This document shows, in pieces, positions 35,538 to 64,000 of a stretch of DNA of 64,000 bases. Each line of letters opens with the position of its first letter. Within the stretch, counting starts at the first letter, position 1. A program made the position numbers and the translations under genes. This stretch comes from Mytilus edulis (lineage: Eukaryota): the NCBI RefSeq assembly GCF_963676685.1, contig NC_092349.1, positions 77,004,001 to 77,068,000 on the forward strand. Reading direction: 5' to 3'. The notes under the pieces are model-generated. The model was not told the DNA's origin, did no database searches, and saw only the letters and a list, made by a program, of their open reading frames with translations.

Positions 35538-38500
35538 ATGCCTGCTAAGAAAAGAAAGTCACAAGAGACAGCTGATAGCAAAGAAACTGTTAAAGACAGT
35601 CCGACGAAAAAATCAAAGAAAGCCTCAGAAGCAGACGCTTTCAAACTCATTGTTGAATACTGGTATGAAACAGGTTTTTGTCTTTTTTTGCCAGAGCTCT
35701 AGCTTTAAATCTTCAATTGTGATAGTAAACATAACCAACCATGATAACCATAATTGTTAAGAGTTTAAATCTAAGGAAACTTTTCATAGTAGTATAACAT
35801 TTGACACCCACATATGCAACTATTCCAGTCATAATTAGGTTCGATAACTCTGTATGTGACTGGTTTAATTATGGTTATGTAAAATGTACTGGTTACCCAA
35901 GTAATAATTTCAAAATATATATATATAGATATTGCATCTTTGTTTCAACCCATCCGTGGTTTCCTTTCGTTGATATAAAATATTATCATTAAATGATTTC
36001 ATAAACAATCGTATAATACTAATATATATATTAAGTCTTGTCAAAATTTACATCGTGATTAGGTCACGTTGCCATGTTTGTTTTGTTTGATCACGTTGAT
36101 GACTTAATTAATATCTCCACAATCTTGCTTTATCCTTAATTATCATACGAGTTACAATAACGTGTCATATTTAATTGCAATACAAACAGTTAAATCTTAT
36201 TGAATTATTTGCATGTGTAAACTAAGTGTCGAACATCCTCTACGTTTGAAATTATTTGGTCGCCATTTTGTTATATGTAACTTCGAAATTTTATCAAAAC
36301 AAATAGCATGTATCCACTTTCACAGAGGGAAATAGTGTTTAAATATATGCTGCATTAAGGTAAGACAATTATTGAAAAGACATGCATCTAACAATTTTAC
36401 GATTTTCATCGTACAAATCTTCAAAAATCTATATGTCCATGTCGCCCCACGCTATCAATGTTCTAAACTGCATGGTCGGTGCATGTAAATCTTTATTTTT
36501 AGTGTGAGAGACTGTTTCTAATAAATATATTGAAGAACATGTGAAAAAAGAAATTTCGTAAGTACAAAAAGACACACTTTGATAAATATTTGAAATATTA
36601 CATTTTGATTTATAACTAAATGAATACCGGCATGTCGTGTCGTTATGAACCTTCAACAGTGTCCGCCATTTTGAAAATATTGCTGAAGACTGCCAAAATA
36701 TGAACTTTTCAAACAAATTTCGAAGCAAAAAGTTTAATACCTGAACTGATATGGTTTGCCATTTACTTTAAATAAATATGTTGTCGATCTTTTTAGAGGT
36801 TGGAAGGATATAAGTAACAATAAATTAATTGAGAAAATTGATTTTACAAAAAGGTCCCATTGCAATTTTGTCGAGTTTTAACGAAGATGTCAACGGAGGC
36901 TGTGTGGCTATGTCACCTCAATTTTCAAACTTATTTCGAAGCACGAAATCATATTTCTGAACTGAAACTTAAAACATATTTAATTGTAAAAATTTATAAA
37001 CTGTAAAACGCGGGGTTGGAAGGAAAAATATACTTTATAACAAACAAGTTATGACCGTTTTATCTATGTACCCCGTTCACTTTCATTGATAATCTATCGG
37101 CCATTAATGATATACAACAGAAGTGTAAAAGTCACGTGATGACGGAGATAGTTGGATATGAAATTGGAGTTTGTAATTAAGAGATTCAACCCCCCCTTTT
37201 TTTTTTTAAATTTGTTACATTCTAATATAGTTTACATTTTCCAAGATTAATCAATATTTTACTATTAATAGGGTTTTTTTTTTTTTTTTTAAGTTTCCTT
37301 AGTTATACTCATATAACATGTAAAGTATGAATTGAAAGAGGTTTAACAGTTTATAGGATAACTGCACTCATCAGAGTGAAAAGTACTTGCAGTTCAAAAA
37401 AGCACATCAATATGATGAGGTCAATAACCATCAACACAAAAGTTGTTATTCTTTTTAAGAAAAAAAAGATATCAAAGTAATTCCACAAGAATTTCAACAA
37501 CATGCTATCCAGATAGCCTTACTGCTGTAAGGATCATCAATATACTGATTTAGATCATATTGTAACTAACATTGACTAACAAATCGAGCATCATGATGTT
37601 TCTAGTTTCAATTGCATTTTTGTAAAGTTATAATCCTATAAATTCTTTTGTTTTCAATTTCAGCAAATCCTGACAAGTATTCAAGCGCAGGGCTGAAACA
37701 TTAGTAGCAGACTTGCGCCAGACCTTTGGTGAGGTAGAAGTTGATTTCAATCCTTCCAAACCTCGCCGTGGAAGTTTTGAATTTACTCTGGTTAAGGGTG
37801 GAAAGGGTAGGTTTATTTGAGAATAACTGAGTGACATCCGTTTTACATGTTTACTAAATAGATTTATGGTCCTGTCACGAAAAAGTCATATCAATGTACA
37901 TTGTATAACTTAATAAAAAATTATGAGGCTTTGTTTAGTAATTGGAAATAAAGATACATTATGTAGATTTATAGTTAATTGGTTACAAAAATGTTTCCAG
38001 GTTAACGTAAATATTCACATATTCCCACTTTCACACTCCAGGATCTTGTTGATCTTATAATTCATTTGTCCAAATATTTTTGTCACACTTCCCACTTTCA
38101 CACTCCAGGATCTTGTTGATCTGATATTGCATTTGTCCAAATATTTTTGTCACACTTCCCACTTTCACACTCCAGGATCTTCTTGATCTGATATTGCATT
38201 TGTCCAAATATTTTTGTCACACTTCCCGTTTTCACACTCCAGGATCTTGTTGATCTGATATTGCATTTGTCCAAATATTTTTGTCACACTTCCCACTTTC
38301 ACACTCCAGGATCTTGTTGATCTGATATTGCATTTGTCCAAATATTTTTGTCACACTTCCCACTTTCACACTCTAGGATCTTGTTGATCTGATATTGCAT
38401 TTGTCCAAATATTTTTGTCACACTTCCCACTTTCACACTCTAGGATCTTGTTGATCTGGTAATTCATTTGTCCAAATATTTCTGTCACACTTCCCACTTT

Positions 38501-40456
38501 CACACTCTAGGATCTTGTTGATCTGATATTGCATTTGTCCAAATATTTTTGTCACACTTCCCACTTTCACACTCTAGGATCTTGTTGATCTGATAATTCA
38601 TTTGTCCAAATATTTTTGTCACACTTCCCACTTTCACACTCTAGGATCTTGTTGATCTGATATTGCATTTGTCCAAATATTTTTGTCACACTTCCCACTT
38701 TCACACTCTAGGATCTTGTTGATCTGATATTGCATTTGTCCAAATATTTTTGTCACACTTCCCACTTTCTCACTCCAGGATCTTGTTGATCTGATATTGC
38801 ATTTGTCCAAATATTTTTGTCACACTTCCCACTTTCACACTCTAGGATCTTGTTGATCTGATAATTCATTTGTCCAAATATTTTTGTCACACTTCCCACT
38901 TTCACACTCTAGGATCTTGTTGATCTGATATTGCATTTGTCCAAATATTTTTGTCACACTTCCCACTTTCACACTCTAGGATCTTGTTGATCTGATATTG
39001 CATTTGTCTAAATATTTTTGTCACACTTCCCACTTTCACACTCTAGGATCTTGTTGATCTGACATTGCATTTGTCCAAATATTTTTGCCACACTTCCCAC
39101 TTTCACACTCTAGGATCTTGTTGATCTGATATTGCATTTGTCCAAATATTTTTGTCACACTTCCCACTTTCACACTCTAGGATCTTGTTGATCTGATATT
39201 GCATTTGTCCAAATATTTTTGTCACACTTCCCACTTTCACACTCTAGGATCTTGTTGATCTGATATTGCATTTGTCCAAATATTTTTGTCACACTTCCCA
39301 CTTTCACACTCTAGGATCTTGTTGATCTGATATTGCATTTGTCCAAATATTTTTGTCACACTTCCCACTTTCACACTCTAGGATCTTGTTGATCTGATAT
39401 TGCATTTGTCCAAATATTTTTGTCACACTTCCCACTTTCACACTCCAGGATCTTGTTGATCTGATATTGCATTTGTCCAAATATTTTTGTCACACTTCCC
39501 ACTTTCACACTCTAGGATCTTGTTGATCTGGTAATTCATTTGTCCAAATATTTCTGTCACACTTCCCACTTTCACACTCTAGGATCTTGTTGATCTGATA
39601 TTGCATTTGTCCAAATATTTTTGTCACACTTCCCACTTTCACACTCTAGGATCTTGTTGATCTGATAATTCATTTGTCCAAATATTTTTGTCACACTTCC
39701 CACTTTCACACTCTAGGATCTTGTTGATCTGATATTGCATTTGTCCAAATATTTTTGTCACACCTTCCACTTTCACACTCTAGGATCTTGTTGATCTGAT
39801 AATTCATTTGTCCAAATATTTTTGTCACACACATCTCTGAAGTTTATTAACAGATGGACTTCATATTTGGTGATCAGTAGCTTTTACAGCTAATGAGTTA
39901 TGAAGTGTTAAGTGTTTTTTATAGCTGTCTAGCATCATCTTCCTCTTTGTCAATACTTTTAATATGTCAATATTCAATATACAATTTTCCAATGCCACTG
40001 GAAAGAATGACTTCATATAATTTGGTCTGCAGCCTTGGCAGCCATGACAAATAAATAATGTGACAAACACTTCTTTCAATATGAACAATTTTACTGTATA
40101 TCAATGTTGCATTCTTGTAAAAAAAACACTGGCAATAGTAATTGATGTTTAACGACATTCCATGAAAAACCTAATTGCTTCAAAATGAAAACGTTTTCAG
40201 AAAGTTGAAATGAAGTTGTGTTTTTTCATTTTGCAATAAAATAATGCTATTGTACAGAATAATATTGGTGTCAGAATTTGCGCAATATCTTGGACGATAC
40301 AAATTATTGCAACAGTAACATCCTCATTGCATTATTATTTTTTTTTATTTTACAGAAACCGTAATATGGACAGGAGTAAAGAAAGGACCACCTAGGAAGA
40401 TGAAATCCCCCGAAACACCAGATCTAATTATTGAGGCAATCAAAAAGAATCTCTAA
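35538..40456 (+). CDS. SELENOH: Selenoprotein H, 122 aa; exons 35538-35662, 37664-37806, 40356-40456; Sec codon TGA at 37671-37673
   Basis: MPAKKRKSQETADSKETVKDSPTKKSKKASEADAFKLIVEYC|KSUQVFKRRAETLVADLRQTFGEVEVDFNPSKPRRGSFEFTLVKGGK|ETVIWTGVKKGPPRKMKSPETPDLIIEAIKKNL*. Basic N-terminal NLS-like segment, CxxU (the Cys codon is split TG|C by intron 1), and the SelH motifs NPxKPRRGSFE and WTGxKKGPPRK. SECIS present downstream. Confidence 0.95.
38020..39830. repeat. 67-bp tandem satellite, ~27 copies, in SELENOH intron 2
   Basis: Unit cccactttcacact(c/t)aggatcttgttgatctgatattgcatttgtccaaatatttttgtcacactt, highly homogeneous. Confidence 0.97.
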
Positions 40457-56719: not shown

Positions 56720-58903
56720 CTTTTTATCTGCTCGTTTATTTTGCAAGAAACTATGTACTTAGTGGGCTGTTGCCTGCCGTCTCTGTTATCGTAGCAATGA
56801 TTAGAGTTATCGTTACTAAAACTGGGCATTACGAAAAGCTGGAAGTCATTCATTCCATGCCAACACGGAAAGGCGGAAAAGGTAAATTGGGAATCAAGGC
56901 ATTATATATCTTTCTCCTGACATATAGAAAACCACTAACTTTAGAACAACAGAGAAGTCAATTTATAAGCGACCCAATGTACTTGGGGACAGGACATTTA
57001 TTTAGTCCAACCTTTTTTTCCATATTCAGTGATCATTTTTTTCCCTAATAATTTCAATTATTTTCGTGCCGGTTTTTTTCTTTATTACATGAACGCAAAT
57101 ATATGTATGCATCAGTGACCGCTGTGGATAGTAAACTTGGATTTGATAGTACATAGCAGAAAAAGTTATTTCCCATATATTTAAGTATAATTTGAAAATC
57201 AAATTAATCATTAAACAAAAAAATATCGGATATTGGAGTTTATTAATAGGGATCGAGAGGGCTGAAAAAATAGTCCTGTCCACAATTGAATTTGTCTTTT
57301 GATGTAATAAGAAAAAAATTGATACTATGCATGCTTTTTAAATGGAAAGTGTGACGTCATGATGCCGTGATTTTGTTCAGAACAGCACAAAACAGGCCAT
57401 GATCTACTCAAATATAATTCGAATCACAACTTTTCAGAGTGTTCCTAATAATTCTTTACCATGATAAAGGTTTTTTTCTTCAAAATATACCAAATTTCAT
57501 CTGTAAATACTCAGACCCTCCCCCCCCCCCTCCCCAGAATTCTTCTTTCTTTATCATTGGAATTACAAAAGACACAGTTAATTAATTTACATACTATAAA
57601 AAAGATCCCTTCACATCCTTGTCTTCACATAAGAACGATATCCACAGCGACAAATCTCACCAAGCTCTATATGATGAAGTACCATACTCGAAAATATGCT
57701 CATGGAATTCCTGAGATTAAGCTTTTCTTAGTATCTATATCAGTTAATATCAGGAATCATTCCATAAGTTTGGCTTTAAAATGATCTTGACCTCCATTTA
57801 TATAAATAAATTAATCACACAGAATCCGCGTCACTAGCAATGCTGAAAGTAAATTGATTCATCCTGTAATGCCTACCAGTATTAAAAAATTGAACAATGA
57901 TCGAAAATGAAATCCAATGTGTGTACAGAAATTGTAACGATTTTTTCCATCATCGGTCCACTATCAGACTATGTTGGAAATAAATTATCTTGTGTACGGA
58001 AATGTCCATAGATTAGATGACTGGGTCTAGCTGGGGTATACATATAATGGTGAATAGTGACAGAAAATGAAGATGAGTGGGAAATAGACGAACTAATAAA
58101 GAATAGGGGATAATGGTGTTCTAAATTATAAAGAAATGAGAATACTTATAATGATGTGCTATGATGTATAGTATAAAAGATATAGTGCTTGCTTGGTTGT
58201 TGTTCCCTGTGGCCAGCATTTGTAGGCATATCAAGGACGAGAACAAACCAACAAGGCAAAGAATACATTAAGTATGATATGCAAGAAAGGGTTCTTCCAG
58301 GATGAAGGCGGGAAATATGGACGGTCTCATTGACACTCATACCACATTATTCTTTTTATTCATTTATTTATTCATACCACTGTTAAACTGAGGTATGTCT
58401 GATAAACTGATAGTCAGTTTGTCTTGTAAGACTCCTCATCTAGAGAGTTGTTTCGAACGTTCTATAATTCGCACAAAGAGCTTGACACTTTCTTCTCAAG
58501 ACATCAGATTAAACTTTACCAATCCGGACGTGGCTGCGTATTTATACATCCCTCACCAAACGGACGTCTTAGTAAGATTAATTTAATATGACGGACTGAC
58601 CAAATTATATACCCCATTCAACTCTAGACAAGAGAAATAACGGACCAGGCAAATCACGAACATAGAGACAATTGACATATGAATTAAAGAATACAGAATA
58701 ACTACTAAATATGATCAAATATCATGAACCTTTGGCTCAGTTCTTTTAAATTTATTTATAAACATCGATTTAAATTTCCCCCGCTTCTAATCTTTACCAA
58801 TGAGTATGCGTTTAATTATACATATGTGACATAATATTACATTTAAATAAGTCAGATAAACAAGTTCAATACACACATCTCCATTATACACATACATGTA
58901 AAC

Positions 58904-61900
58904 ATGCCTATTGTGCAGGTGACAACTAGTCTAAATAAAGGACTGATTCCTACAGAATTTGCCAAGAAATTTTCGGCGTTTCTTGCTGAGACCTTGGACA
59001 AGCCAATCGAGGTAGGTATTAATATAACCAAGAACTTATACCTGTGAATTATACATTATGCTCGCCCCTTTTTGTTAATTAACCATGTTAACCGATTTTG
59101 ATACTTGATTTTTGCACTTCACATTTTATATTGATTAACTATATAACTTTGCCTTAATTAGACAAACTCTGAAACTGAATAACTATTCTTAGGTGTGTAA
59201 GATTGATTGATTGTTAAATGCTTAACGTCCAGTGGCAAACAGTGGCGGATCCAGAAATTTTCATAAGTGGGGGCCCACTGGCTGCCTTAGAGGGGGCCCG
59301 ATCTCGTCACGCTTCAGTGATTCCCTATAAAAGCAACAACAAAATTTCTCAAAGGGGGGGGGGGCGGGCCCCCTGCCCCCCCCCCCCCCCCCCCAAATCC
59401 GCCTCTGGCAAATATTTCATGCATATTCAGGACAAAGGTGCGTAGGATATAACGTGATGAAATGTCTCCAAAGTCATGTGGTTACTGTATCAATATACAG
59501 TTGTTGATTTATTTTTACGCTATATAACACTGTCACTGTGGGTTCAATTTATCGATTTACTCGAAACAGTTTGAACAGGGACGATATTTTCTTAGATTGT
59601 TGTCTAAGTTTAGTGCTCTTGATAAACATTTACTCTAGGGGTATTTTCTTATCACTGTACAGGTCTCTGCCTGGTTATGTTGATCAGCGTCTTATTCAGA
59701 CTTTTAATAACATGAATTACTGTAATCATTTATTGCATCTTCCATTTAAGCCTTATCTTAACAATATGTGCATGTAAATCTTTTTGTACAAAAGATAACA
59801 GTAGTAATCACCTGTGGTGCGTTAGTGTGTAAATCTTCTCTTTCAGAAGATAACACTGGTAATTACCTGTTATGCTTTAGTTTGTAGGTTTTCCCTTTCA
59901 GAAGATAACAGAAATAATCACTAGTAATGCTTTAGTTTGTAAGTCTTCTCTTACAGAAGATAACATAAGTAATCACCAGTGATGCTTTAGTTTGTATGTC
60001 TTCTCTTACAGAAGATAACAGTAGTAATCACCTGTGATATGTTAGTTTGTAAATCTTCTCTTTCAGAAGATAACAGTAGTAATCACCTGTGATATTTTAG
60101 TTTTTAAACCTTCTCTTACAGAAGATAACACTAGTAATCACCTGTGATGCTTTAGTGTGTAATCTTCTCTTTCAGAAGATAACAGTTGTAATCACCACCT
60201 GTGATTACTTAAGTTTGTCAATCTCTCTTCTAGGAGATAACAGTTAGTAATTGCCTATGATGCTTTAATATGTAGTTCTTCCTTTTCAGAAGATAGCTGA
60301 TGCAATCACCGGTTACTGTTTTAGTCTGTAAATATTCTCTTTCAGAAGATAACAAAAGAAATCATCTTTGAAGTTTGATGCTTTAGTTTGTAAATCTTCG
60401 CTTACAGAAGATAACAGTAGTAATCACCTTTGATGTTTTAATTTGTAAATCCCCTCTTTCAGAAGATAACAGTAGTAATCACCTTTGATCCTTTAGTTTG
60501 TAAATCTTCTCTTACAGAGGATAACATTTGTAATCACTTACGGTGCTTTAGGTTGTAAATCTTCTCTTTCAGAAGATAACATTCGTAATCACCTTTGATC
60601 CTTTAGTTTGTAAATCTTCTCTTTCAGAAGATAACATTTGTAATCACTTACGGTGCTTTAGTTTGTAAATCCCCTCTTTCAGAAGATAACAGTAGTAATC
60701 ACCTTTGATCCTTTAGTTTGTAAATCTTCTCTTTCAGAAGATAACATTTGTAATCACTTACGGTGCTTTAGTTTGTAAATCCCCTCTTTCAGAAGATAAC
60801 ATTCGTAATCACCTTTGATCCTTTAGTTTGTAAATCTTCTCTTTCAGAAGATAACATTTGTAATCACTTATGGTGCTTTAGTTTGTAAATCCCCTCTTTC
60901 AGAAGATAACATTCGTAATCACCTTTGATCCTTTAGTTTGTAAATCTTCTCTTTCAGAAGATAACATTTGTAATCACTTACGGTGCTTTAGGTTGTAAAT
61001 CTTCTCTTACAGAAGATAACATTTGTAATCACTTACGGTGCTTTAGTTTGTAAATGTTCTCTTTCAGAAGATAACATTCGTAATCACCTTTGATCCTTTA
61101 GTTTGTAAATCTTCTCTTTCAGAAGATAACATTTGTAATCACTTACGGTGCTTTAGGTTGTAAATCTTCTCTTACAGAAGATAACATTTGTAATCACTTA
61201 CGGTGCTTTAGTTTGTAAATCTTCTCTTTCAGAAGATAACATTCGTAATCACCTTTGATCCTTTAGTTTGTAAATCTTCTCTTTCAGAAGATAACATTTG
61301 TAATCACTTACGATGCTTTAGGTTGTAAATCTTCTCTTTCAGAAGATAACATTTGTAATCACTTACGATGCTTTAGGTTGTAAATCTTCTCTTTCAGAAG
61401 ATAACATTCGTAATCACCTTTGATCCTTTAGTTTGTAAATCTTCTCTTTCAGAAGATAACATTTGTAATCACTTACGATGCTTTAGGTTGTAAATCTTCT
61501 CTTTCAGAAGATAACATTTGTAATCACTTACGATGCTTTAGGTTGTAAATCTTCTCTTTCAGAAGATAACATTTGTAATCACTTACGATGCTTTAGTTTG
61601 TAAATCTTCTCTTTCAGAAGATAACATTTGTAATCACTTACGATGCTTTAGTTTGTAAATCTTCTCTTTCAGAAGATAACATTTGTAATCACTTACGATG
61701 CTTTAGTTTGTAAATCTTCTCTTTCAGAAGATAACATTTGTAATCACTTACGATGCTTTAGTTTGTAAATCTTCTCTTACAGAAGGTAACATTCGTAATC
61801 ACCTGTGATCCTTAATGTGTAAATCTTCTCTTACAGAAGATAACAGTTATAATAACCTATGATGCTTAAATTTGTTAATTTTCTCTTTCAGATGATAACA

Positions 61901-62991
61901 GTAGTAATCACCAGTGAAGCTTTAGTTTGTAAATTTTCTCTTACAGAAAATAACACTAGTAATCACCTGTGATGCCTTAGTTTGTAATGCTGGAGACGAA
62001 TCACCGTTCATGCTGATCTCAATCATATCCATCGCGAGATTTAACGAGAAAGACAATCCAGGATATACAGACAAAATTACTACCTTTGTTAAGGAAGAAA
62101 CCAAATTACCTGGAAACAAGTATGACGTTAATTACAGCTTTTTTAGCAATTTCTTTATCTCAATTTTATAGAATGTATGTTACCTATCATGTTAAAACAT
62201 TTGCCCTGTCCACATACGCTAGGTGAAGGATGAGAAATTTGTTTCATTGTTAATATCATCAGTCGATTTTTTTTTGTGTACCTACCACATACTTGCACTT
62301 TCTTAGTTTGTCTTAGTAATACCTCGTTTTTGGAGAATGTAATAACTTTGACATGATCCATTTAACATACCAAAACCTTATTTTTAAATTGAATTACAAA
62401 TGCAAACAATGGAAAAAAATATTATCCACATCCTGTACTCAAGGCCCTGCCAACTTGGCAAAAATGTGTTTTCAGAATTTAATCTTGTGGAAGATGTTAA
62501 AGAAAAGTACGAGTAATTGATACTCGGATTGATAGCTGCGTATTTAATGTCCAATGCTAAATACTTCAGACATATTTAGGACGAAAACAAATCGACAAAA
62601 GTAAAGTGAGTCGACTGGATTTCAGAGCGATGAAATTGAACAATATCTGTTGTTTCATTAATAATACATCATTCTATTAGAAAATGATTTAATGTAGCTA
62701 CTTAAACGTACAATGGAAAGAATTTTCAAGACCAACAATTTACTAGAGTTGCACAGGCATAACAAGTCCAAACAAACAGGCAGGTAAAAGAAACCCGTTC
62801 GCAAGCCATTTCTAAAATATTGATGTTTTTGGGACTTTTTTTATAACGTATATTATTGTTGCATATAAAGCGAATTATTCTGATGAATGAACATATTTGT
62901 GATATTTGTATAGAAAAACCTATTTCTTTGTTTTAGGGTACAGATTGTTTATACAGATCTTCAACCGCACATGGCGGGTAAAGGGAAATGA
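58904..62991 (+). CDS. MIF: MIF / D-dopachrome tautomerase family protein, 111 aa; exons 58904-59011, 61947-62119, 62937-62991
   Basis: MPIVQVTTSLNKGLIPTEFAKKFSAFLAETLDKPIE|KITLVITCDALVCNAGDESPFMLISIISIARFNEKDNPGYTDKITTFVKEETKLPGNK|VQIVYTDLQPHMAGKGK*. Catalytic Pro1, Lys32 and Ser63-Ile64 are in register; coding exon sizes of 108 and 173 nt match the canonical MIF gene structure. MIF versus DDT subfamily not resolved. AATAAA at 63024 and ~63133. Confidence 0.9.
59240..59408. mobile_element. MITE of the same family, in MIF intron 1
   Basis: ggcaaa|cagtggcggat...atccgcctctg|gcaaa; inserted in a short repeat whose empty form (cttaacgtccagtggcaaatgtttcatgcat) is at ~16593. Confidence 0.8.
59773..61990. 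repeat. 55-bp tandem satellite, ~40 copies, derived from the MIF intron 1/exon 2 junction
   Basis: Unit gtaaatcttctctttcag|AAGATAACATTTGTAATCACTTACGATGCTTTAGTTT; the last unit (ttttctcttacag|AAAATAACACTAGTAATCACCTGTGATGCCTTAGTTTGTAA...) runs directly into MIF exon 2 coding sequence. Confidence 0.95.
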
Positions 62992-63279
62992 AGAAAACAA
63001 CATATTTATGATACTAACTACACAATAAACAGAATACAATATGTATGACTTTAACCTTGATAATCATGTTTGAAACACTTACTTATACTAATAAACACTA
63101 ACACATGTAGAATATTATAATTTTGTTTTATCAATAAATTTATTTATAAAGTTTAAATCAATTATACACATTTGACTATAATATATATGTTTTGGGTGTG
63201 ATATGTCATCCTCCAACAATATGATACAACAGTACAGACAAGAAAAGGCTGCTGTCAAGTTTAAGATCGGGAGGATTTT

Positions 63280-63955
63280 TCCCTTGGACAAATGAATTCT
63301 AAAGTTTTCTTAAAACTGTTTGTAATAAAACATTTAAATCCATCCTCCATTACCTATATTTATCTACACGTTTCATCTTTCATCTATACTGAATACATAT
63401 TGTATTATATGTTTCTGATAACGTATAGTAGTCTCAGATAGGACAGATCGAATATGAAGAAAACAACGTACAGCTATCACTATAGCTATAATACTAAGAG
63501 AGAAATGAATAAGAATTACATTAGATTAATTAAAAAAAACATTACAGTGAGTGAACTATAAACAAAGAGAAACTTTGAAAACAAAAAGAACGAGGAGGTT
63601 AACCCATGTTCCGGTCGCATCTCAGTGGCGGATCTAGAAATTTTCATAACTGCCATAAGAAGGGACACGCTTTAGTGGTCCCTAATTAGTAATGAACCAA
63701 TTTTCCCCACCTACCCACCCCAACACAACCTCCGCCCCAATCCGTCTATGCATCTATTAAAGCTACTGTTTTAGATTTGAAAGCTGATAAAGCATTCCTA
63801 TCGCGGAAAGCAAATGATGTTTTATATAATTTTATTCAGTTTAAATGAAAGATAAAACGTGTAGATACATATAGGTAATGGAGGATGGATTTAAATGTTT
63901 TATTACAAACAGTTTAACTTTTAGGAAAACTTGTAGATTTCATTCGTCAAAGTGA
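63280..63955. mobile_element. Foldback-like element with ~120-bp inverted arms
   Basis: aaactgtttgtaataaaacatttaaatccatcctccattacctat (63313-) is the reverse complement of ataggtaatggaggatggatttaaatgttttattacaaacagttt (63871-63915). Confidence 0.75.
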
Positions 63956-64000
63956 AAACGAACCTTATAAATGCTTAAATACCTGTCGAAGGATTTGTCT

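What the first reader, a model, noticed from the sequence alone, without database searches (positions are those of the whole stretch)
59773..61990. Satellite built from a splice acceptor: ~40 tandem copies of the MIF intron-1/exon-2 junction
Seen in sequence: each 55-bp unit is a pyrimidine tract plus CAG followed by a variant of the first ~13 codons of MIF exon 2 (KITVVITCDAL, KITFVITFDPL, KITFVITYGAL, KITFVITYDAL, versus the real KITLVITCDAL). Only the last unit continues into the MIF fold. The spliceosome therefore faces about 40 near-identical acceptors and must pick the most distal one; using an upstream B-type unit reads into TAA in the next unit. Inference: copy number could set the productive/NMD ratio of this cytokine-family gene. 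More speculatively, units could act as variable mini-cassettes, since every unit has GT donor-like sites (TTA|GTTTGT gives an in-frame 33-nt insertion; TTAG|GTTGT spliced to ccttag|TTTGT at 61981 would swap the segment in frame). Gene conversion from the array could also diversify the functional exon start.
Basis: partly seen in the sequence, partly recalled or inferred. Interest (0 to 1): 0.85.

Follow-up and report, generated by a model that had tools for sequence, protein, structure and literature searches.

The report
Splice-acceptor minisatellite in mussel MIF-like gene
Intron 1 of a blue-mussel MIF-like immune gene holds 39 tandem decoy copies of its own intron-1/exon-2 splice junction ahead of the real one, a large example of the already described "mirage" junction minisatellites and most likely a near-neutral passenger.

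Summary
Window 59773-61987 is a 55-bp x 40.1 tandem array. Each unit holds the last 19 nt of intron 1 plus the first 36 nt of exon 2 of a three-exon MIF-family gene. The last unit is the real junction (acceptor 61946|61947).

My gene model equals RefSeq XP_071178072.1, "MIF-like protein mif-2", Mytilus edulis. Orthologues in three other Mytilus species have the same junction. The unit occurs nowhere else in the genome, and nine MIF paralogue loci lack such an array.

The diverged edge units encode the ancestral KITVVITCDALV. The centre is homogenised into 110- and 165-bp higher-order repeats. This is the usual pattern of unequal exchange, and it shows that the exon gave rise to the satellite.

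All 39 decoy acceptors lead to a premature stop within 41 codons.

This kind of repeat is already described: amphioxus "mirages" (PMC3087553, PMC3902484) and the human F7 intron-7 repeat (PMC1557585), where the extra sites stay silent. Earlier notes of this scan report many such arrays elsewhere in this same genome.

Verdict: a real, large new member of a known kind; modest interest.

The parts
58904..59011 (+). Exon 1 coding part (ATG to donor; 36 codons, phase 0) of the MIF-like gene
   Evidence: Translation begins MPIVQV and ends KPIE. Pfam MIF profile positions 1-34. Identical to residues 1-36 of P0008 = XP_071178072.1. Followed by the donor GAG|GTAGGT.
59012..61946 (+). Intron 1 (2935 nt); 2174 nt of it (74%) is the array
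   Evidence: Bounded by the GT at 59012 and the AG at 61945-61946. Five paralogues checked have an intron at the same position.
59237..59417 (+). Dispersed ~170-bp repeat (SINE/MITE-like) inside intron 1, upstream of the array and unrelated to it
   Evidence: Query positions 638-818 of window:58600-59772 match many places in the genome at 84-92% identity; 2350 first-look candidates.
59773..61987 (+). 55-bp x 40 tandem array (junction minisatellite); TGTAA at both ends
   Evidence: TRF, unit list, higher-order structure. Found only at this locus in the 1.37-Gb assembly.
59773..60388 (+). Units 1-11: old, diverged 5' edge (59-89% identical to the true junction; indels; acceptor lost in unit 1)
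   Evidence: Several units still encode KITVVITC/KITLVITC, like the real exon.
60389..61763 (+). Units 12-36: homogenised core. A (..ITYG/DAL) and B (..ITFDPL) units in the pattern BBABABABABAABAABAABAAAAAA
   Evidence: 110-bp blocks are 108-109/110 identical, 165-bp blocks are 160-164/165 identical, and units 33-36 are identical to each other.
61764..61927 (+). Units 37-39: diverged 3' edge decoys directly upstream of the true junction. Units 37 and 38 carry in-frame stops in the pseudo-exon; unit 39 starts ATG instead of AAG
61928..61946 (+). Authentic 3' splice region (pyrimidine tract + CAG); intronic part of unit 40
   Evidence: The junction E|KIT is shared by proteins of M. edulis, M. 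galloprovincialis, M. trossulus and M. californianus.
61947..62119 (+). Exon 2 (173 nt); its first 41 nt belong to the array
   Evidence: Pfam MIF profile 37-90. Identical to P0008 residues 37-94. Donor CAA|GTATGA.
62120..62936 (+). Intron 2 (817 nt)
   Evidence: GT at 62120 and AG at 62935-62936.
62937..62991 (+). Exon 3 coding part (completes the codon AA|G, then VQIVYTDLQPHMAGKGK and stop TGA at 62989-62991)
   Evidence: Located with orthologue P0001 and read. Identical to the C-terminus of P0008.

Best explanation
This is a 'mirage'-type splice-junction minisatellite in intron 1 of the single-copy Mytilus edulis MIF-like gene (RefSeq 'MIF-like protein mif-2').

Origin. A 55-bp piece, made of the last 19 nt of intron 1 and the first 36 nt of exon 2, was duplicated in tandem. 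The likely cause is slippage or misalignment between two TGTAA pentamers that bracket the piece. Unequal exchange then grew it to 40 units. The centre keeps being homogenised (110-bp, then 165-bp higher-order repeats, then four identical units), while the two edges keep old, diverged copies.

Splicing. The mRNA joins the exon-1 donor (59011|59012) to the last, exon-proximal acceptor (61946|61947). I infer that this choice comes from exon definition. Only the last copy is followed, with no further acceptor copy in between, by a real exon and its donor 173 nt downstream. This matches the amphioxus mirages and the human F7 repeat, where the site next to the exon is used and the copies stay silent.

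Consequence. Any use of one of the 39 decoys adds 55-2155 nt and hits a stop within 41 codons, far upstream of the last exon junction. Such transcripts should be removed by nonsense-mediated decay. The array is therefore most likely a near-neutral passenger that costs at most a small fraction of transcripts.

What is shown: the array, its origin from the junction, the gene model, the stops. What is inferred: the birth mechanism, exon definition as the selector, NMD, neutrality.
For: - Array. Unit anatomy.
- MIF identity: the two exons match Pfam MIF on both sides of the junction, and the whole public protein P0008 scores 67.8 bits.
- Gene model: it equals XP_071178072.1, which sits on a contig of 93,901,275 bp, the length of the window's contig. 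Four Mytilus species share the E|KIT junction and the 111-aa length.
- Local origin: the unit is unique to this locus, the gene is single copy, and nine paralogue loci have no such array within the 1.5 kb held on each side. Five of these paralogues were checked for intron position and share it.
- Direction exon to satellite: the edge units encode KITVVITCDALV, identical to the exon-2 start of the M. edulis protein P0002 and one residue from M. californianus. This stretch aligns to MIF profile 37 onward.
- Turnover pattern. TGTAA is present at 59773 and 61983.
- Premature stops for all decoys.
- Published analogues with silent extra sites: PMC3087553 (globin BflGb6, acceptor side, 3-6 units, RT-PCR normal), PMC3902484, PMC1557585.
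Against: By sequence, the decoys look at least as good as the true site. Their pyrimidine tract is 10/11 against 9/11, and the CAG is the same. A-type units supply a CTTAC branch-like motif 33 nt upstream of the next acceptor, which the true site lacks (my reading). The decoys are also transcribed first.

Some decoy use, hidden by NMD, therefore cannot be excluded. The annotated model and the orthologous proteins show which product exists, not that nothing else is made. Neutrality is an inference. Array length and polymorphism were not checked with reads.
Confidence: 0.75

Rival explanations
1. Copy-number-dependent splicing throttle. Decoy acceptors, or decoy pseudo-exons, capture the exon-1 donor or engage U2AF/U1 unproductively. 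A fraction of transcripts that grows with array length would then go to NMD or to intron detention, which would make the array a heritable expression dial for this immune gene.
For: There are 38 decoys with an intact AG and a pyrimidine tract as good as the real one. All of them give early stops. The decoys are transcribed before the true site. Each unit also has a donor-like GTAAAT 38 nt after its acceptor, so it resembles a tiny pseudo-exon. The decoy-exon model of intron retention is established in human cells (PMC6097662, PMC7373989).
Against: No RNA data could be obtained. In the known junction minisatellites the copies are silent (PMC1557585, PMC3087553, PMC3902484). The recurrent donor-like site lacks both G-1 and G+5. 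The array's structure (diverged edges, homogenised centre, several broken units) is what neutral turnover gives.
Confidence: 0.12
2. Intronic enhancer made of GATA sites. Because the exon starts AAG-ATA-ACA, almost every unit carries AGATAA, so the array offers about 35 same-strand GATA-factor sites at 55-bp spacing in the first intron of an immune gene.
For: AGATAA occurs 35 times in the 2.2-kb array, always on the + strand, against 22 (+) and 39 (-) in the other 62 kb of the window. The motif is lost in the true exon, which reads AAAATAA. GATAAC is intact in 13 of the 16 diverged edge units.
Against: The motif is a by-product of the K-I-T codons that were copied. The apparent conservation in the edge units is no greater than that of neighbouring columns, and the variable columns are mostly those where the core carries derived changes. 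There are no binding, chromatin or expression data. The paralogues manage without such an array.
Confidence: 0.05
3. Source of protein variation. Units would act as in-frame mini-cassettes, or as donors for gene conversion or unequal exchange that rewrites the first 12 codons of exon 2.
For: The exon start is physically part of the repeat, so misaligned exchange must sometimes replace it. M. edulis proteins differ at codon 4 (V in P0002, L in P0008/P0011), and both codons exist in the array: GTA in units 1, 5, 6, 12, 13, 17 and 39, CTA in unit 7.
Against: A single point change explains V/L. No database protein has a cassette insertion or an F/Y/P-type core segment at the exon start. The proposed donors match only 4 of 9 consensus positions. 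The pseudo-exon bounded by GTAAAT is 38 nt long, so it shifts the frame.
Confidence: 0.04
4. Assembly artefact. The array is real, but its length or order is wrong, or it is an error of a repeat-prone assembly step.
For: Tandem repeats are a known source of assembly error, and an amphioxus mirage was mis-assembled in a draft genome (PMC3087553). I could not lay reads on the locus.
Against: At 2.2 kb the array is well within single long reads. It has a rich, ordered internal variant structure with unique edge units, not a collapsed or stuttered copy. The flanks are unique, and the gene model across it equals the RefSeq protein.
Confidence: 0.03

Closest known systems
Amphioxus 'mirage' minisatellites (Adh3, troponin C, globin BflGb6/BflGb9, PGBD5)
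   Same: Both are tandem duplications whose unit spans an intron/exon boundary with its splice signal. BflGb6 is on the acceptor side, exactly as here (3' end of the intron plus 5' part of exon 2). Both show concerted evolution in the centre, with the boundary units left out of homogenisation. The authentic site is used and no aberrant mRNAs were seen (PMC3087553, PMC3902484).
   Different: The host here is a mollusc, not a cephalochordate. There are 40 units against 3-6 in BflGb6. The unit is 55 bp against 150-160 bp (Adh3 units: 10-72 bp). Splicing and length instability were not tested here.
Human F7 intron-7 37-bp VNTR (Borensztajn et al. 2006, PMC1557585)
   Same: One end unit of the minisatellite spans the exon/intron boundary, so the authentic splice site is accompanied by several near-identical pseudo-sites. 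The site next to the exon is used, and the pseudo-sites are functional but silent.
   Different: F7 repeats the donor side, so the authentic site is transcribed first. Here the acceptor is repeated, and the 39 copies are transcribed before the authentic site. A 5'-to-3' scanning rule therefore cannot explain the choice, and exon definition is the more likely selector.
Decoy exons that promote intron retention (SF3B1, OGT; PMC6097662, PMC7373989)
   Same: These are intronic pseudo-exons with splice-site-like ends and premature stops that can engage the splicing machinery without yielding productive mRNA.
   Different: Decoy exons are single, conserved elements with demonstrated U2AF binding and regulatory effect. 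Here there is a repeat array with weak donor-like ends and no functional data.
Splice-junction minisatellites noted earlier by this scan in the same genome (s1-832281, s1-832289, s1-832272, s1-832278, s1-832277)
   Same: Same genome, same architecture (exon edge plus splice signal amplified into the adjoining intron), and the same comparison with mirages and F7.
   Different: Those are other genes. This instance is on the acceptor side, has 40 units and lies in a MIF-family gene. I did not re-test those notes' claim that such arrays are enriched at junctions genome-wide.

Membership tests
Mirage / splice-junction minisatellite | Head-to-tail tandem repeat of minisatellite unit size | tested here: met
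   Period 55, 40.1 copies, score 2841.
Mirage / splice-junction minisatellite | The unit spans an intron/exon boundary and carries the splice signal | tested here: met
   Each unit has 19 nt of intron (pyrimidine tract + CAG) and 36 nt of exon 2. The AG is kept in 39 of 40 units.
Mirage / splice-junction minisatellite | One terminal unit is the authentic junction, continuous with the functional exon of the same gene (local origin, not an inserted element) | tested here: met
   Unit 40 runs into exon 2 (Pfam MIF 37-90). The unit is found nowhere else in the genome. The edge units encode the orthologous exon start.
Mirage / splice-junction minisatellite | The authentic site is used in mRNA and the copies are silent | tested here: inconclusive
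   The RefSeq protein and the proteins of four species use the last acceptor.
Mirage / splice-junction minisatellite | Length instability or polymorphism between haplotypes | not testable with these tools
   The assembly holds a single copy.
MIF / D-dopachrome tautomerase family (Pfam PF01187) | Sequence match to the family profile over its length | tested here: met
   Searched exon by exon: exon 1 scores 19.7 bits (profile 1-34) and exon 2 scores 22.1 bits (profile 37-90). The public protein P0008, identical to the model, scores 67.8 bits with E 1.3e-18 over profile 1-107.
MIF / D-dopachrome tautomerase family (Pfam PF01187) | N-terminal proline after the initiator Met (tautomerase catalytic base) | tested here: met
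   The protein starts MPIVQV. Catalytic activity itself was not tested.
MIF / D-dopachrome tautomerase family (Pfam PF01187) | Conserved three-exon structure with a phase-0 intron after about codon 36 | tested here: met
   Exons of 108, 173 and 55 nt. Five paralogues have an acceptor at the same codon. That exon 2 of human MIF is also 173 nt is my recollection, not tested here.
Dispersed satellite or transposon-derived array | Copies of the unit at other loci in the genome | tested here: not met
   A 275-bp query of five units hits only C6:77.063-77.066 Mb, which is this array. The tool warns that very common words are skipped, but this array was itself found.
Decoy exon (intron-retention regulator) | Pseudo-exon with both splice sites, bound by splicing factors, that raises retention of the host intron | not testable with these tools
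   Only sequence resemblance: acceptor plus a weak GTAAAT 38 nt downstream. No RNA or binding data.

The most novel reading that the evidence does not exclude
The array is a copy-number-tunable splicing throttle. The 38 intact decoy acceptors are transcribed before the true one and look at least as strong by sequence. They would capture the exon-1 donor, or form decoy pseudo-exons, in a fraction of transcripts that grows with array length, sending those transcripts to NMD or nuclear detention. Length alleles of this minisatellite would then give heritable, graded expression differences of a MIF-like immune gene in mussels. It would also be a natural 39-fold competition experiment for 3' splice-site choice, the mirror of the F7 system.
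Probability: 0.12. Interest if true: 0.6.

Novelty: new member of a known kind. Interest (0 to 1): 0.3.

Why it matters
It is a clean and unusually large acceptor-side example of a junction minisatellite: 39 decoys, against 3-6 in the published amphioxus globin case. It sits in a small three-exon gene of an immune-related family.

Acceptor-side arrays test splice-site choice harder than the well-studied F7 donor repeat, because the decoys emerge from the polymerase first. A minigene series from this locus could show how exon definition overrides first-come-first-served choice.

If array length varies between mussels, it is also a ready marker and a candidate cis-modifier of expression.

As it stands, it adds one more case to a phenomenon that this scan has already seen repeatedly in this genome. 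It is described in the literature for amphioxus and human, not yet, as far as I could find, for molluscs.

Tried and rejected
2. The look-up of encoding contigs, to fetch the M. californianus orthologous locus, was closed. No cross-species DNA comparison was possible.
3. Two metagenome scans, one with an exon-2 22-mer and one with a core-unit 23-mer, were both blank. This is uninformative.
4. Exon 1 with its intronic read-through (47 aa) was searched for short truncated products of decoy splicing. There were no candidates. This is uninformative, since even the normal protein has no transcript-assembly member in its cluster.
5. Phage collection megablast found no match, which is irrelevant for an animal gene. 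Rfam on 57000-64000 found nothing.
6. Origin from a dispersed repeat or transposon: rejected, because the unit is unique to this locus.
7. Family-wide feature: rejected, because nine paralogue loci have no such array.
8. Hairpin as the discriminator. A 7-bp stem pairs the pyrimidine tract with the exon start and buries the AG. It scores -5.9 kcal/mol in most decoys and -3.2 in the true site, where a C-G pair is replaced by U-A through changes on both sides. I do not rely on it. Units 13, 17, 19, 21 and 39 lack the stem, five paralogue junctions have none, and one compensated pair is weak evidence.
9. Selective constraint on the acceptor or GATA motif in the edge units. The variable columns are mainly those where the core carries derived bases, so there is no clear sign of constraint.
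10. The spliced model was never sent to a search tool. Exons were searched separately by reference. The joined translation was computed only inside a local script, to place stop codons. The public protein P0008, identical to the model, was used by its id.
Full report
WHAT IS THERE

Tandem Repeats Finder reports one array at window 59773-61987: period 55, 40.1 copies, 85% matches, score 2841. Splitting the array on the acceptor motif gives 40 units. Each unit consists of 19 nt that read like the end of an intron (TGTAAATCTTCTCTTTCAG in the consensus) followed by 36 nt that read like the start of an exon (12 codons, K-I-T-x-V-I-T-...). The homologous AG is kept in 39 of 40 units; unit 1 has CAA and unit 9 has TAG.

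THE GENE

- Exon 1 (58904-59011, 36 codons) matches Pfam MIF profile positions 1-34.
- The stretch that starts right after the last CAG (61947-62119, 173 nt) matches profile positions 37-90.
- Exon 3 was located with the M. californianus orthologue P0001. It lies at 62937-62991, behind a TTTTAG acceptor, and ends with TGA.

The model gives 111 residues. It is identical to P0008 = XP_071178072.1, 'MIF-like protein mif-2 [Mytilus edulis]'. That protein sits on a contig of 93,901,275 bp, exactly the length of the window's contig C6. The window is therefore from the M. edulis RefSeq assembly.

Proteins of M. galloprovincialis (P0009, also deposited as QAB05309.1), M. trossulus (P0012) and M. californianus (P0001) all have 111 residues and the same E|KIT junction. 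P0008 scores 67.8 bits on Pfam MIF.

The joined translation was made only in a local script, to place stop codons.

WHERE THE ARRAY CAME FROM

- A query of five units finds only this locus in the 1.37-Gb genome.
- The gene is single copy.
- Nine MIF paralogue loci have no array at their exon-2 junction, within the 1.5 kb held on each side. Five of them were checked for intron position and have an intron at the same codon.
- The diverged edge units (1, 5, 6, 7 and others) encode KITVVITC.. or KITLVITC... This is the real exon start in M. edulis proteins P0002 and P0008, and one residue away from M. californianus.
- The core units carry derived F/Y/P variants.

So the exon gave rise to the satellite, not the reverse. 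Every unit starts with TGTAA, and the same pentamer follows the last unit inside exon 2 at 61983-61987. This suggests, by inference, that the first duplication arose by misalignment between two TGTAA pentamers 55 bp apart.

Without the 39 extra copies, intron 1 would be about 790 nt (2935 nt minus 39 units). It is now 2935 nt, of which 74% is array.

HOW THE ARRAY EVOLVED

- Units 1-11 and 37-39 are 59-89% identical to the true junction and carry indels.
- Units 12-36 are homogenised.
- The core reads BBABABABABAABAABAABAAAAAA. Its 110-bp blocks are 108-109/110 identical, its 165-bp blocks are 160-164/165 identical, and units 33-36 are identical to one another.

Diverged ends and a homogenised centre with higher-order repeats are the usual result of unequal exchange. 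The same pattern is described for the amphioxus globin mirage (PMC3087553).

CONSEQUENCES FOR SPLICING

If any of the 39 decoy acceptors were joined to exon 1, and the rest retained up to the exon-2 donor, 55-2155 nt would be added. A stop would follow after 3-41 codons. Because 55 is 1 modulo 3, only every third unit is even in frame with exon 2, and none of those is open. Such stops lie far upstream of the last exon junction, so nonsense-mediated decay is expected (established rule; inference here).

By sequence, the decoys are not weaker than the true site:
- Pyrimidines at positions -14 to -4 are 10/11 in the decoys against 9/11 in the true site.
- Both have CAG.
- A-type units place a CTTAC branch-like motif 33 nt upstream of the next acceptor.

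A 7-bp stem between the pyrimidine tract and the exon start buries the AG. It scores -5.9 kcal/mol in most decoys and -3.2 in the true site, where one C-G pair has become U-A by changes on both sides. Five units lack the stem, and five paralogue junctions have none. I therefore treat it as a curiosity, not as the selector.

Donor-like sites inside the units are weak. TTT|GTAAAT (21 units) matches 5 of 9 consensus positions and has neither G-1 nor G+5. The real donors match 7 of 9 (exon 1) and 6 of 9 (exon 2).

The most likely selector is exon definition. Only the last acceptor is followed directly by an open exon and its donor 173 nt downstream. This step is inferred.

WHAT IS KNOWN ALREADY

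[quoted passage not shown] In globin BflGb6 the unit is the 3' end of an intron plus the 5' part of exon 2, with 3 and 6 units in two haplotypes. RT-PCR suggested normal splicing (PMC3087553; PMC3902484).

The human F7 gene has a 37-bp repeat whose first unit spans the exon-7 donor. Its pseudo-sites are functional but silent (PMC1557585).

Earlier notes of this scan report many such junction minisatellites in other pieces of this same genome and make the same comparison. I found the papers independently and checked them, but I did not re-test the claimed genome-wide enrichment.

The present case is thus a new member of a known kind. Its distinctive features are the acceptor side, the 40 units, the mollusc host and the MIF-family gene.

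WHAT COULD NOT BE DONE

- Two metagenome scans and one protein search for truncated products were blank.

By analogy with the known cases I rate them unlikely.

One other reading I considered is a cluster of GATA sites. AGATAA occurs 35 times in the array, all on the + strand, as a by-product of the K-I-T codons. There is no evidence for such a role.

VERDICT

This is a real, large splice-acceptor minisatellite of the known 'mirage' type, most likely a near-neutral passenger. Confidence 0.75; interest 0.3.

Noticed in passing
window 38022-39830: A second long minisatellite in the window: 67 bp x 27 copies, 96% matches. It lies inside the region another first-stage note calls a selenoprotein H gene. 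On the minus strand each unit reads as an open, protein-like stretch followed by GTGTGA, so it might be another exon-edge repeat. I read only the array edges and could not tell.
   Followed up: partly
window 59237-59417 (intron 1 of the MIF-like gene): A ~170-bp dispersed repeat with long G and C runs. It has more than 2000 first-look candidates in the genome, at 84-92% identity, and is probably a SINE or MITE. A shorter dispersed repeat lies in intron 2 at about 62527-62600.
   Followed up: partly
L024:2028-2933 (just beyond the window end, about 64027-64932 in window numbering): A compound tandem array about 1 kb downstream of the gene, with periods of 54 and 80 bp and 98% matches. It stays open in one reading frame for 166 codons. 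Its nature is unknown.
   Followed up: no
window 61928-61955 and every array unit: A 7-bp inverted repeat pairs the pyrimidine tract with the first exon bases (AUCUUCU/AGAAGAU). In the true junction both sides have changed (AUUUUCU/AGAAAAU), so the pairing is kept.
   Followed up: partly
proteins P0002 and P0011 (older M. edulis assembly): Two 198- and 215-residue models fuse an unrelated N-terminal ORF to this MIF-like gene in place of the first residues of exon 1. They carry two different exon-1 variants (TKEQIPKDF and NKGLIPTDF), which also occur among the M. galloprovincialis proteins. These may be two old allelic lineages or two gene copies that the present assembly shows as one.
   Followed up: no
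window 59883-59999 (units 3-5): Three old units start with much better donor-like motifs than the core does: T|GTAGGT, T|GTAAGT and T|GTATGT. On the minus strand, A-type core units read ATC|GTAAGT.
   Followed up: no
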